From Orbicella franksi (Eukaryota), in NCBI GenBank assembly GCA_964199315.1, contig OZ116702.1, forward strand, positions 8,556,001 to 8,620,000: a stretch of DNA of 64,000 nucleotides, written 5' to 3'. The notes beneath the pieces are model-generated. The model did not search any database and was not told the DNA's origin. It was given only the letters and a program-made list of their open reading frames with translations. Of the stretch, positions 26,650 through 30,330 are shown piece by piece (the first letter of the stretch is position 1; the number at the start of each line of letters is the position of its first letter). The translations under genes and the position numbers were made by a program.

Positions 26650-29600
26650 CTCAGACGCTAGATGTGCGTGCATTATGCGTTTCAGGGTTCACGCGAGTCA
26701 TTATCTGAATTTTACTCCTGATACGTTCATGAACAATGCCACTACCATTCTACTGATAATAAAGCTATTAATGGATGATCCGTGTACGAGTAAATGTGAT
26801 TGACTTTCAAGATAAGATCTTAGTGATTTGCATTTTATCTTGTGCTTTACATGTGAGCATTTGTTAATCAACTTTCGATACGTAGTTTACCGTGTTTTAC
26901 TAAGAAAATAACGAAAGTAATGTTATTAAATAACAGCGCATAGATAAAGGAGCGTAAGAAACTCAGATTAAAGAAAAATGACTGTCTGGTAAGCCCTGCG
27001 ATCTTACTACCGGTGTAACTGGAGTCTTCCGCCAAATGCAGATATTCGGGATTTTATTGTTGAAATGTCACTCTAGACCTTGTAGCAATAAAAGTAGTTG
27101 CAGATTCGCACATAAATGGGAGGACACGTTTGATTGATGTGGAACGTGTAGTTGTTCTGGAACACTTCAAAACAAGTACACTTCGACAGAAGGATGGCTA
27201 AGAAGATATCACGTAATCCTTTTATCCTGTTGATGTTCCAATAGCTACCGCTAGCGGAAGCATCACCTTCCCGGACGCTAGGCACGCATGCGTAGTGCGC
27301 TTCAGGGCTTAAACGGCTCATTACCGGAATTTTACTGCTGATACGTTCATGAACACTGTCACTATCATTGTACTGACAATAAAGCTATTAATTGATTATC
27401 CATGGGCGAGTAAATTTGATTGACTTTCAAGATAAGATCTTAGTGATTTGCATTTTATCTTGCGCTTTGCACTTGAGCATTTGTTAATCAACTTTCGATT
27501 CATAGTTTACCGTGTTTTACTAAGAAAATAATAAAATTTTATGTTATTAAATAACAGAGCATACTGTCAATACCATTGTACTGACAAAAGAGCTATTAAT
27601 GGATGATCCATAGGTTAGTAAATTTGATTGACTTTCAAGATAAGATCGTACTGATTTGCATCTTGCGCTTTGCGTGTGAGCATTTATTAATCAACTTTCA
27701 ATACATAGTTTACCGTGTTTTACTAAGAAAATAACGAAATTAATGTTATTAAATAACAGTGCACAGATGAAGGGATGTTGGAAACTCAGATTAAAAAGAA
27801 GAAAATGACTGGATTCTGGGAGGCCTCCACGATCTTTCTACCTGTGTAGCTGGAATCTTCCGCCAAATGCAAATATTCGGGATTTTATTGTTGAAATGTA
27901 ACTCAAGACCTTGCAGCAATAAAAGTGAATTGCAGATTGGCCCATAAGGGAGAACACGTTTGATTCACTTAGAACGTGTAATTGGTCTGGAATACTTCAA
28001 AACAAGTACACTTCGACAGAAGAATGGCTCGCAAAATATCCTGTAACCCTTTTATCCCTTGACCTTGCAATAGCTACCGCTAGCGGAAGCATCACCTTCT
28101 CGGAAGCTAGACATGCATGCATAGTGCGCTTCAGGGATCACAAGACTCATTAGCCGAATTTTACTGCTGATACGTTCATGAACACTGACAATAGAGCTAT
28201 TAATGGATGATCCATGGGTGGGAAAATTTGATTGACTTTCGAGATAAGATCTCAGTGATTTACAGTTTATTTTGTGCTTTGCGTGTGAGCATTTGTTAAT
28301 TAACTTTCAATACATAGTCTACCGTATTTTACTAAGAAAATAACAAAATTGATGTTAAATAACAGTGCATAGATAAAGGGATGATAAGAAAATCAGATTA
28401 AAACAAAAGCAAACAAAAAAAGACTGCATTCCGGAAAGCGCCGCGATCTTACTACCGGTATTCGGATGGATGTAGTTGGAGTCTTCAGCCAAATGCAGAT
28501 ATTCGGGATTTTATTGTTGAGATGTCACTCAAGACCTTATAGCAATAAAAGTGGATTTCAGATTGGTCCATAAATGGGAGGACACGTTTGATTGATGTGG
28601 AACGTGTAGTTGTTCTGGAACACTTCAAAACAAGTGCACTTTACAGAATTATGGCTTGCAAGATATCACGTAATCTTTTTATCCCCTTGATCTTTCAATA
28701 GCCACCGCCAGCGGAAGTATCACCTTCTCGGAAGCTAGACATGCATGCATAGTGCGCTTCAGGGATCACAGGACTCATTACTGGAATTGTACTGCTGATA
28801 CGTTCATGAATACTGTCACTACCATTGTACTGACAATAGAGCTATTAATGGATGATCCATGGGCGAGTAAATTTGATTGACTTTTAAGATAAAATCTTAG
28901 TGATTTACATCTTGTGCTTTGCATGTGAACATTTGTTAATCAACTTTCAATACATAGTTTACCGTGTTTTACTAAGAAAATAACGAAATTAATGTCGTTA
29001 GATAACAGTGCATAGATAAAGGGATGGTTAGAAACTCAGATTAAAAAAAAAAAGAAAAGAAAACATGATTGGATTCTGGGAGGCCTCACGATCTTACTAC
29101 CAGTGTAGCTGGAATCTTCCACCAAATGCAAATATTCGGAATTTTATTGTTGAAATGTAACTCAAGACCTTGCAGCAATAAAAGTGGATTGCAGATTGGC
29201 CCATAAATGGGACGTCACGTTTGATTCACTTAGAACGTGTAACTGTTCTGGAAAACTTCAGAACAAGTCCACTTCGACAGAAGAATGGCTCGCAAAATAT
29301 CCCGTAATCCTTTCATCCCCTTGACCTTGCAATAGCTACCGCTAACGGAAGCATCTCGGAAGTTAGACATGCATGTGCCTCAGTACTCACAGGAATCATT
29401 ACCGGAATTTTACCGCTGATACGTTCATGACCAATGTCACTACCTTTGTACTGACAATAGAGGTATTAATGGATGATCCATGGGTGGGTGAATTTGATTG
29501 ACTTTCAAGATAAGATCGTAGTGATTTGCATCTTGTGCTTTGCATGTGAGCATTTGTTAATCAACTTTCGATACGTAGTTTACCGTGTTTTACTAAGAAA

Positions 29601-30330
29601 ATCATGAAATTAATATTAAATAACAGTGCATACATAAGGCTAGGGGATGGTAAGAAACTCAGATTAAAAAAAAAATGATTGGATTTTGGTAAACCCCGCG
29701 ATCTTACTACCGGTGTAGCTGGAATCTTCTGCAAATATTCGGGATTTTATTGTTGAGATGTCACTCAAGACCTTGTATCAATAAAAGTGGATTGCAGATT
29801 GGCCCATAAATGGGAGGACACGTTTGATTCACTTAGAACGTGTAATTGGTCTGGAATACTTTAAAACAAGTACACTTCGACAGAAGAATAGCTCGCAAAA
29901 TATCCTGTAATCCTTTCATCCCCTTGACCTTGCAATAGCTACCGCTAGCGGAAGCATCACCTTCTCGGAAGCTAGACATGCATGCATAGTGCGCTTCAGG
30001 GATCACAAGACTCATTAGCGGAATTTTACTGCTGATACGTTCATGAACACTGTCACTACCATTGTACTGACAATAGAGCTATTAATGGATGATCCATGGG
30101 TGGGTAATTTGATTGAATTTCAAGTTAAGATTTTAGTGGTTTTCATCTTGTGCTTTGCATGTGAGCATTTGTTAATCAACTTTCAATACATAGTTTACCG
30201 TGTTTTACTAAGAAAATAACGAAATTAGTGTTATTATATAGCAGTGCATAGATAAGGGGATGATAAGAAAATCAGATTCTAAAAAAAATGCGATTAGATT
30301 CTGGTAAGCCCCGCGATCTTACTTCCGGGA
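26650..30330 (+). repeat. Tandem array of five ~600-650-bp chimeric units (promoter + signal-peptide part of exon 1 + intron-1 segment of the downstream gene)
   Basis: ATG-equivalents at 27194, 28024, 28651, 29285 and 29888 versus the functional ATG at 30534. Unit 1 has an extra ~200-bp internal duplication. Confidence 0.9.

What the first reader, a model, noticed from the sequence alone, without database searches (positions are those of the whole stretch)
26650..30330. Tandem amplification of a gene's own promoter and signal-peptide sequence directly upstream of it
Seen: five units of 603-646 bp (the first is 830 bp because of an internal duplication) abut the functional exon 1. Each unit is a chimera of the upstream promoter region, the first ~24 codons of exon 1, and an intron-1 segment (32087-32330) joined at ctagacatg. 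All five carry the same TGG>TAG change at codon 17 (27242, 28071, 28699, 29333, 29936). All lack the TATAAAA; four of the five carry an ATTGG (inverse CCAAT) motif upstream. Inference: one deleted, dead duplicate was amplified as a minisatellite. It could act as a copy-number-variable cis-regulatory array, a source of short uORF transcripts, or a source of RNAs homologous to the mRNA 5' end.
Basis: partly seen in the sequence, partly recalled or inferred. Interest (0 to 1): 0.7.

Follow-up and report, generated by a model that had tools for sequence, protein, structure and literature searches.

The report
Decayed tandem copies of gene start
A coral gene for a membrane-anchored EGF/ZP matrix protein is preceded by one long and five short broken copies of its own promoter, first exon and an intron piece; these look like old, locus-bound duplication debris, and I found no sign that they work as a regulatory device.

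Summary
Five head-to-tail units, spaced 830, 628, 633, 603 and 646 bp, abut the working promoter at 30264. Each unit joins about 240 bp of promoter and 5'UTR, about 27 codons of exon 1, and an intron-1 segment. All five share the TGG>TAG change at codon 17 and a 13-bp gap over the TATA box.

- A longer seventh module lies at 24106-26950. It has a TATA box, a full exon 1 with its splice donor but a stop at codon 3, and intron-like sequence. That sequence ends in the intron segment that opens the array.
- The short units' intron segment groups with this upstream module, not with the working gene's intron.
- A neighbouring paralogue has its own tandem duplicate of the same 5' module, and both of its first exons are intact.

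The unit occurs nowhere else in the 497-Mb genome. DNA runs from 12 studies and at least three organism labels hold its sequence. Units differ from each other by 7-15%, so the array is old and not homogenised. Variation among units is no lower at sites conserved in the gene family, so I see no constraint. The RNA data were uninformative because the gene itself was silent.

Most likely this is neutral debris of repeated unequal recombination. The scan found a similar array on other DNA of this genome (TRAF gene, s1-243791).

The parts
24106..24336 (+). Promoter copy of the upstream long module ('module 1'), with TATAAAA at 24279-24285
   Evidence: Aligns with 30309-30533 of the working promoter. 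Sequence read.
24337..24462 (+). Pseudo exon 1 of module 1: full 42-codon length, stop (TGA) at codon 3 (24343-24345), codon-17 TGG kept, GT donor at 24463
   Evidence: 24257-24496 is 89% identical to 30454-30693 (family D9).
24463..26649 (+). Intron-1-like sequence of module 1, colinear with intron 1 of paralogues A and B and interrupted by a dispersed repeat of about 470 bp at about 25012-25478
   Evidence: Colinear BLAST blocks 24511-24759, 26022-26265 and 26572-26628 against paralogue introns. Dispersed repeat with 1711 first-look candidates genome-wide.
26650..26950 (+). Intron segment u0: the intron-1 element of module 1 and the first element of the array
   Evidence: Matches 32087-32330 at 81%. 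Its 5' flank aligns with paralogue intron sequence, not exon 1. It groups with the unit intron segments at 100/99.
26954..27780 (+). Unit u1: promoter/exon-1 remnant 26954-27270 (ATG 27194, TAG 27242), intron segment 27274-27563, internal repeat 27563-27780
27781..28385 (+). Unit u2: ATG 28024, 1-bp deletion, TAG letters at 28071, join at 28107
28386..29026 (+). Unit u3: ATG 28651, TAG 28699, join at 28735
29027..29649 (+). Unit u4: ATG 29285, TAG 29333
29650..30264 (+). Unit u5: start codon lost (ATA 29888), TAG 29936, join at 29972
30265..30533 (+). Working promoter and 5'UTR, TATAAAA at 30476-30482
30534..30659 (+). Working exon 1 (42 codons, signal peptide), GT donor at 30660
   Evidence: Intact homologous exon 1 in paralogues A and B.
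32087..32381 (+). Intron-1 segment homologous to the unit's second half. The core 32204-32298 is 78-83% identical to intron 1 of paralogue B and 66% to A.
32778..33043 (+). Exon 2, approximate ends (AG acceptor at 32776-32777)
   Evidence: Paralogous exons found at 65% protein identity.
33044..51741 (+). Rest of the gene: N-terminal exons without a Pfam family, EGF exons, ZP-N and ZP-C exons, RKKR site, transmembrane exon
   Evidence: Pfam exon by exon. Open stretches.

Best explanation
The array is the decayed product of repeated tandem duplication of the gene's 5' module (promoter, exon 1, first part of intron 1).

Step 1 (shown): the module was duplicated once. This gave module 1 (24106-26950) upstream of the working gene. 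Paralogue B carries the same kind of duplicate.

Step 2 (inferred from shared defects and trees): a further copy, probably derived from module 1, lost the stretch between exon-1 codon 27 and the intron segment. The deletion lies at a short microhomology. The same copy also acquired the TAG at codon 17 and the 13-bp gap over the TATA box.

Step 3 (inferred): unequal crossing-over amplified this short dead unit to five copies in two subfamilies (u1/u3 and u2/u4/u5), with some exchange between units.

The units cannot encode the protein's start. They have no splice donor and an early stop, and one has no ATG. They show no detectable sequence constraint. They most likely have no selected function and act only as about 3.7 kb of spacer between the relic upstream promoter and the working promoter.
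For: All units share one deletion join, one TAG and one TATA gap.

The units form one clade with a long stem (0.16). u2/u4/u5 form a supported subclade in the promoter/exon part. u0, the intron segment of module 1, groups with the unit intron segments at 100/99, apart from the gene's own intron segment.

Module 1 is colinear with paralogue introns from exon 1 through to u0.

Paralogue B has a 3.7-kb tandem duplicate of the same module.

The unit is found only at this locus in 497 Mb. The same search method finds a dispersed repeat 1.5 kb away.

Diversity among units is equal at sites conserved and not conserved in the family. For the intron segment it is 0.121 against 0.123 (Fisher p=0.89). 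For the promoter/exon part it is 0.122 against 0.103 (p=0.73).

No open frame is kept across all units on either strand. No Rfam family matches.

DNA runs of 12 studies and three organism labels hold 61-84% of the sampled 31-mers. One DNA run covers all 30 bins.
Against: The constraint test has little power: 5-7 copies and 100-250 sites.

The two least diverged stretches among units lie in the promoter-proximal region and inside the intron segment (0.065-0.08 against a mean of about 0.11).

The intron-segment core is better conserved between paralogues than the rest of intron 1. It may therefore be a regulatory element, and the array carries six extra copies of it.

One RNA library's contigs match four places in the array exactly, at low depth.

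The promoter/exon tree does not resolve whether the units come from module 1 or from the gene.
Confidence: 0.65

Rival explanations
1. Cis-regulatory array. Each unit keeps about 240 bp of promoter-proximal DNA and an intron-1 element that is conserved in the gene family. The six extra copies of that element would act as a cluster of enhancer-like or factor-binding sites that raises or tunes transcription from the working promoter just downstream.
For: The intron-segment core 32204-32298 is 78-83% identical to intron 1 of paralogue B. The surrounding intron aligns at 62-70%. The lowest between-unit divergence falls in the promoter-proximal part and inside the intron segment. The array has persisted with distinct units across three organism labels.
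Against: Unit diversity is no lower at family-conserved sites. Persistence across very closely related species is also expected for neutral DNA. Paralogue A keeps only about 60 bp of the element at high identity. There are no chromatin or reporter data.
Confidence: 0.17
2. Transcribed array. Transcripts start in the units, or at the TATA-bearing promoter of module 1 and run through the array. They would act by promoter interference, as short-uORF RNAs (12-16 codons in u1-u4), or as precursors of small RNAs homologous to the mRNA's 5' end.
For: Module 1 keeps a TATA box, the exon and a GT donor. Contigs of one RNA library (X15) match 27148-27301, 28488-28696, 29141-29314 and 29496-29677 without a mismatch.
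Against: In that library, depth is as low on intron 1 (30710-30947) as on exon 1. One contig starts 50 bp upstream of the TATA box. This fits carried-over DNA or unspliced read-through. Two polyA raw-read runs give no reads on the array, but none on the gene either. The units lack the TATA box. No splice joint was seen.
Confidence: 0.13
3. Assembly artefact: the array, or its number of units, is produced by misassembly of fewer real copies or of haplotypes.
For: Copy number was not verified with spanning long reads. In DNA run X7 the bin 27480-27679, which holds the internal repeat junction of u1, has almost no depth. One contig joins 28536 to 27080 in register.
Against: Units differ by 7-15% at many fixed positions, far more than haplotypes would. 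Unit-specific contigs without mismatches occur in an independent DNA run under another organism label, and 14 runs hold at least half the words.
Confidence: 0.04

Closest known systems
Partial tandem gene duplications that leave pseudo first exons (unprocessed pseudogene fragments made by unequal crossing-over)
   Same: The copies are local, head-to-tail and derived from the parent gene's own 5' end. They share disabling mutations. The same genome has another such array at a TRAF-like gene (scan note s1-243791, not checked here).
   Different: Here a secondary internal deletion made a compact chimeric unit of about 620 bp, which was then amplified. The result is three tiers: a long relic, short units and the live gene.
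Variable or alternative first-exon clusters (protocadherin and UGT1A type; from my own knowledge)
   Same: Several promoter-plus-first-exon cassettes lie upstream of shared downstream exons. Paralogue B, with two intact cassettes, may truly be of this kind.
   Different: The five units have no splice donor and carry an early stop. They have lost the TATA box, and one has lost its ATG. Module 1 has a stop at codon 3. None can supply a coding first exon.
Minisatellites and macrosatellites near genes (for example the INS VNTR or D4Z4; from my own knowledge)
   Same: A tandem array next to or upstream of a gene, with a unit in the hundreds of bp and possible copy-number variation.
   Different: There are only five to six units. 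They are 7-15% diverged with no sign of ongoing homogenisation. The unit is not found elsewhere in the genome. No polymorphism in unit number was shown.
Stellate / Su(Ste)-type repeats that give small RNAs against a homologous gene (from my own knowledge)
   Same: A tandem array of chimeric, non-coding derivatives of a protein-coding gene.
   Different: The array is on the same strand as its parent and directly upstream of it. No antisense transcription or small RNAs were shown, and the homologous stretch of mRNA is only about 100 nt.

Membership tests
Locus-derived partial tandem duplication (pseudo-exon array) | Units homologous to the adjacent parent gene and colinear with it | tested here: met
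Locus-derived partial tandem duplication (pseudo-exon array) | Shared disabling lesions inherited from one founder copy | tested here: met
   The same join, the TAG at codon 17 and the TATA gap are in all five units. The units are monophyletic.
Locus-derived partial tandem duplication (pseudo-exon array) | Absent elsewhere in the genome | tested here: met
   only local matches, 3 candidates. Positive control for dispersed repeats.
Variable/alternative first-exon cluster | Each cassette has an open first exon starting with ATG | tested here: not met
   Stops at codon 17 (codon 13 in u2's own frame). u5 has ATA. Module 1 has a stop at codon 3.
Variable/alternative first-exon cluster | Each cassette has a splice donor that can join the shared exon 2 | tested here: not met
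   The exon-1 3' end and its donor are deleted in all five units. Only module 1 keeps the donor. No joints were seen in RNA.
Minisatellite / macrosatellite VNTR | Head-to-tail array of similar units | tested here: met
Minisatellite / macrosatellite VNTR | Copy number varies between individuals | tested here: inconclusive
   Contigs only. There is one in-register back-joint and one empty bin in X7. No spanning long reads.
Minisatellite / macrosatellite VNTR | Units kept alike by ongoing exchange (homogenisation) | tested here: not met
   Pairwise identity is 85-96% with stable subfamilies. Some mosaicism between the two halves of units suggests past exchange.
Dispersed repeat / transposable element | Many copies at unrelated loci | tested here: not met
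Structured or small RNA gene (intron-borne) | Match to a described RNA family | tested here: not met
   Rfam E-value scan of 24000-33200: only two chance-level miRNA rows, both outside the units.
Small-RNA-producing homologous repeat (Su(Ste)-like) | Antisense or small RNAs from the array | not testable with these tools
   No small-RNA library was laid, and the single read-laying run was used.

The most novel reading that the evidence does not exclude
The array is a selected dosage device. Six extra copies of a family-conserved intron-1 element plus promoter-proximal sites, stripped of coding capacity, would act as a stackable enhancer or factor-sink whose unit number tunes expression of the ZP matrix gene. 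The repeated, independent 5'-module duplications in this gene family would then reflect selection for such tuning.
Probability: 0.1. Interest if true: 0.6.

Novelty: new member of a known kind. Interest (0 to 1): 0.3.

Why it matters
The main value is as a clean, datable example of how a gene's 5' end is duplicated, deleted and amplified by unequal recombination in a coral genome. Three stages can be seen in one gene family. Paralogue A has one module. Paralogue B has two live modules. The focal gene has one relic, five dead short units and one live module. This warns annotators that promoter-plus-signal-peptide look-alikes upstream of coral genes may be dead copies. If the array did prove to affect expression, it would be a natural copy-number series for testing enhancer dosage in a coral, but nothing here shows that.

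Tried and rejected
- Tandem Repeats Finder missed the array because its longest period is 500.
- The Rfam scan found no RNA family in the units.
- I looked for a conserved open frame across units on both strands and found none. An antisense open stretch over the exon remnant is kept in only four units and has varying length.
- The dispersed-repeat origin was rejected (with the control).
- The constraint tests on units were negative but have low power.
- In the two polyA raw-read RNA runs (X21, X23), the only reads in the stretch lay on dispersed repeats in intron 1. The gene is silent in them, so they say nothing about the array.
- The X15 RNA contigs cannot be told apart from carried-over DNA.
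- A protein-atlas look-up of one N-terminal exon gave only unnamed clusters and weak Ig-like (PKD/He_PIG) leads.
- Literature searches found coral ZP skeletal-matrix proteins (PMC4890752) but nothing on this locus or on such arrays.
- I searched the gene exon by exon, by reference. I did not build or search a joined spliced model, and I did not run the large protein searches.

Full report
**What is there.** The window is C5:8556001-8620000 of a 497-Mb coral genome. Repeat finding and BLAST confirm a head-to-tail array between 26650 and 30264. Successive units are spaced 830, 628, 633, 603 and 646 bp. Each unit has two halves. The first half aligns with 30264-30614, which is the working promoter, 5'UTR and start of exon 1 (about 70% identity). 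The second half aligns with 32087-32330/32381 inside intron 1 (76-85%).

The multiple alignment and a position check confirm them.
- All five units read TAG where the gene has TGG (codon 17, 30582-30584). The TAGs are at exactly the stated positions.
- All five have a 13-bp gap over the TATAAAA at 30476-30482.
- ATTGG stands at the homologous place in u2-u5.
- The join is CTAGACATG in three units and a near variant in the other two.

**Corrections.**
- The ATG is at 30534 and exon 1 is 30534-30659.
- The exon remnant extends to about codon 27.
- u5 has ATA for ATG.
- u2 has a 1-bp deletion, so its own frame stops at codon 13.

**The gene.** Searched exon by exon, it has EGF/cEGF exons, ZP-N and ZP-C exons, an RKKR site and a transmembrane exon. 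The N-terminal exons match no Pfam family. An earlier scan note (s1-249532) calls it an intact spliced ZP protein with an adhesin-like head. I checked only the EGF and ZP parts. I did not build or search a joined spliced model.

The stretch 24106-24759 copies the promoter (TATAAAA at 24279-24285), all of exon 1 (24337-24462) with its GT donor, and the start of intron 1. It is 89% identical to the gene over the TATA-to-donor stretch. Codon 3 is TGA (24343-24345). From there, sensitive BLAST shows blocks colinear with intron 1 of two paralogues. The blocks are 24511-24759, 26022-26265, 26572-26628 and then 26608-26871. The last block is the intron segment that opens the array. A dispersed repeat of about 470 bp (about 25012-25478) interrupts this stretch. 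The 5' flank of the segment at 26650 aligns with paralogue intron sequence, not with exon 1. So 24106-26950 is one long relic module. The array sits between it and the live gene.

**The paralogues.** Two lie 45-90 kb away on the minus strand. Both have an intact 42-codon exon 1 with its donor, and the intron segment sits 2.2-2.4 kb downstream of it. Paralogue B carries its own 3.7-kb tandem duplicate of the same 5' module. That duplicate is 89.6% identical overall but 99-100% identical from about -175 to +225 around the ATG. Both of B's first exons may therefore be in use. Paralogue A has a single module.

**Order of events.**
- In the promoter/exon tree the paralogues form one group. The gene, module 1 and the units form the other, as an unresolved three-way split.
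- The five units are monophyletic (100/99) on a long stem (0.16). u2/u4/u5 form a subclade.
- In the intron-segment tree, module 1's segment groups with the unit segments (100/99), apart from the gene's own segment.
- The simplest history is this. The 5' module was duplicated. A later copy, probably taken from module 1, lost the DNA between exon-1 codon 27 and the intron segment, at a short microhomology. It also gained the TAG and the TATA gap. Unequal crossing-over then amplified it.
- The two halves of a unit do not always give the same nearest neighbour. u3 pairs with u1 in the first half but with u2/u5 in the second. This points to past exchange between units.

**Is it real DNA, and is it local?** A whole-genome search with one unit found only this locus. 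The same method found more than 1700 candidates for the dispersed repeat nearby. Fourteen runs hold at least half of the sampled 31-mers of 27080-33075. Twelve studies and three organism labels plus 'coral metagenome' are represented. DNA run X7, from another organism label, covers all 30 bins and has mismatch-free contigs on unit-specific sequence. Sharing 60-84% of 31-mers implies roughly 99% identity between these corals, while units differ from each other by 7-15%. The array is therefore much older than the split of these corals and is not being homogenised. Unit number was not verified by spanning reads. X7 shows one in-register back-joint (28536 to 27080) and almost no depth at the internal-repeat junction of u1. 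Some structural difference between corals is therefore possible.

**Function.**
- The units cannot supply a coding first exon. They have an early stop and no donor, and one has no ATG.
- No open frame is kept across all units on either strand, and no Rfam family matches.
- If the units were under selection, sites conserved across the gene family should vary less among units. They do not. In the intron segment, diversity is 0.121 at conserved sites and 0.123 at other sites (35% against 33% variable columns, p=0.89). In the promoter/exon part it is 0.122 against 0.103 (p=0.73). Power is low.
- A sliding window shows modest dips (0.065-0.08 against about 0.11) in the promoter-proximal part and inside the intron segment.
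- The intron-segment core 32204-32298 is better conserved between paralogues (78-83% with B) than the surrounding intron (62-70%). A regulatory element multiplied by the array cannot be excluded.

**RNA.** Two polyA raw-read runs gave no reads on the array, exon 1 or exon 2, so the gene is silent in them. Contigs of a third RNA library match four places in the array. They match intron 1 at the same low depth, and one starts upstream of the TATA box. This fits DNA carry-over or unspliced read-through as well as transcription.

**Verdict.** The 'dead duplicate amplified' inference is supported, with an amended source. The functional ideas remain untested. Most likely this is neutral debris of serial unequal recombination at a locus, and in a gene family, prone to 5'-module duplication. 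The scan has noted a comparable half-decayed promoter-plus-first-exon array at a TRAF-like gene on other DNA of this genome (s1-243791; not checked here). That also argues for a general mutational tendency, not a purpose-built device.

Noticed in passing
C5:8671927-8679719 (outside the window; loci L035 and L032, minus strand): Paralogue B of the ZP gene has a 3.7-kb tandem duplicate of promoter, exon 1 and the 5' part of intron 1. It is 89.6% identical overall but 99-100% identical around the ATG. Both first exons and donors are intact, so they are candidates for two live alternative first exons.
   Followed up: partly
window 24343-24345: Module 1's exon-1 copy is full length with a TATA box and donor but has TGA at codon 3. 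In DNA run X7, codon 3 of the working gene reads TGC instead of CGC (place 30540), so this codon varies between corals.
   Followed up: partly
window 3038-17013 (+): The upstream neighbour is a sacsin-like gene with a single 3735-codon open frame (5806-17013). Pfam gives the Sacsin domain twice, plus weak DnaJ and HEPN matches at the C-terminal end.
   Followed up: partly
window 25012-25478; also 30975-31080 and 31280-31480: High-copy dispersed repeats. The first has more than 1700 first-look candidates genome-wide. The two in intron 1 attract very high read depth, including in RNA runs.
   Followed up: partly
window 32204-32298: The core of the intron-1 segment is more conserved between paralogues than the rest of the intron (78-83% against 62-70%). 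It is rich in TAAT-type motifs, making it a candidate conserved non-coding element.
   Followed up: partly
window 27480-27679 and 28536/27080: In DNA run X7, from another organism label, the junction of u1's internal repeat has almost no depth, and one contig joins u3 to u1 in register. This hints that array structure differs between corals.
   Followed up: no
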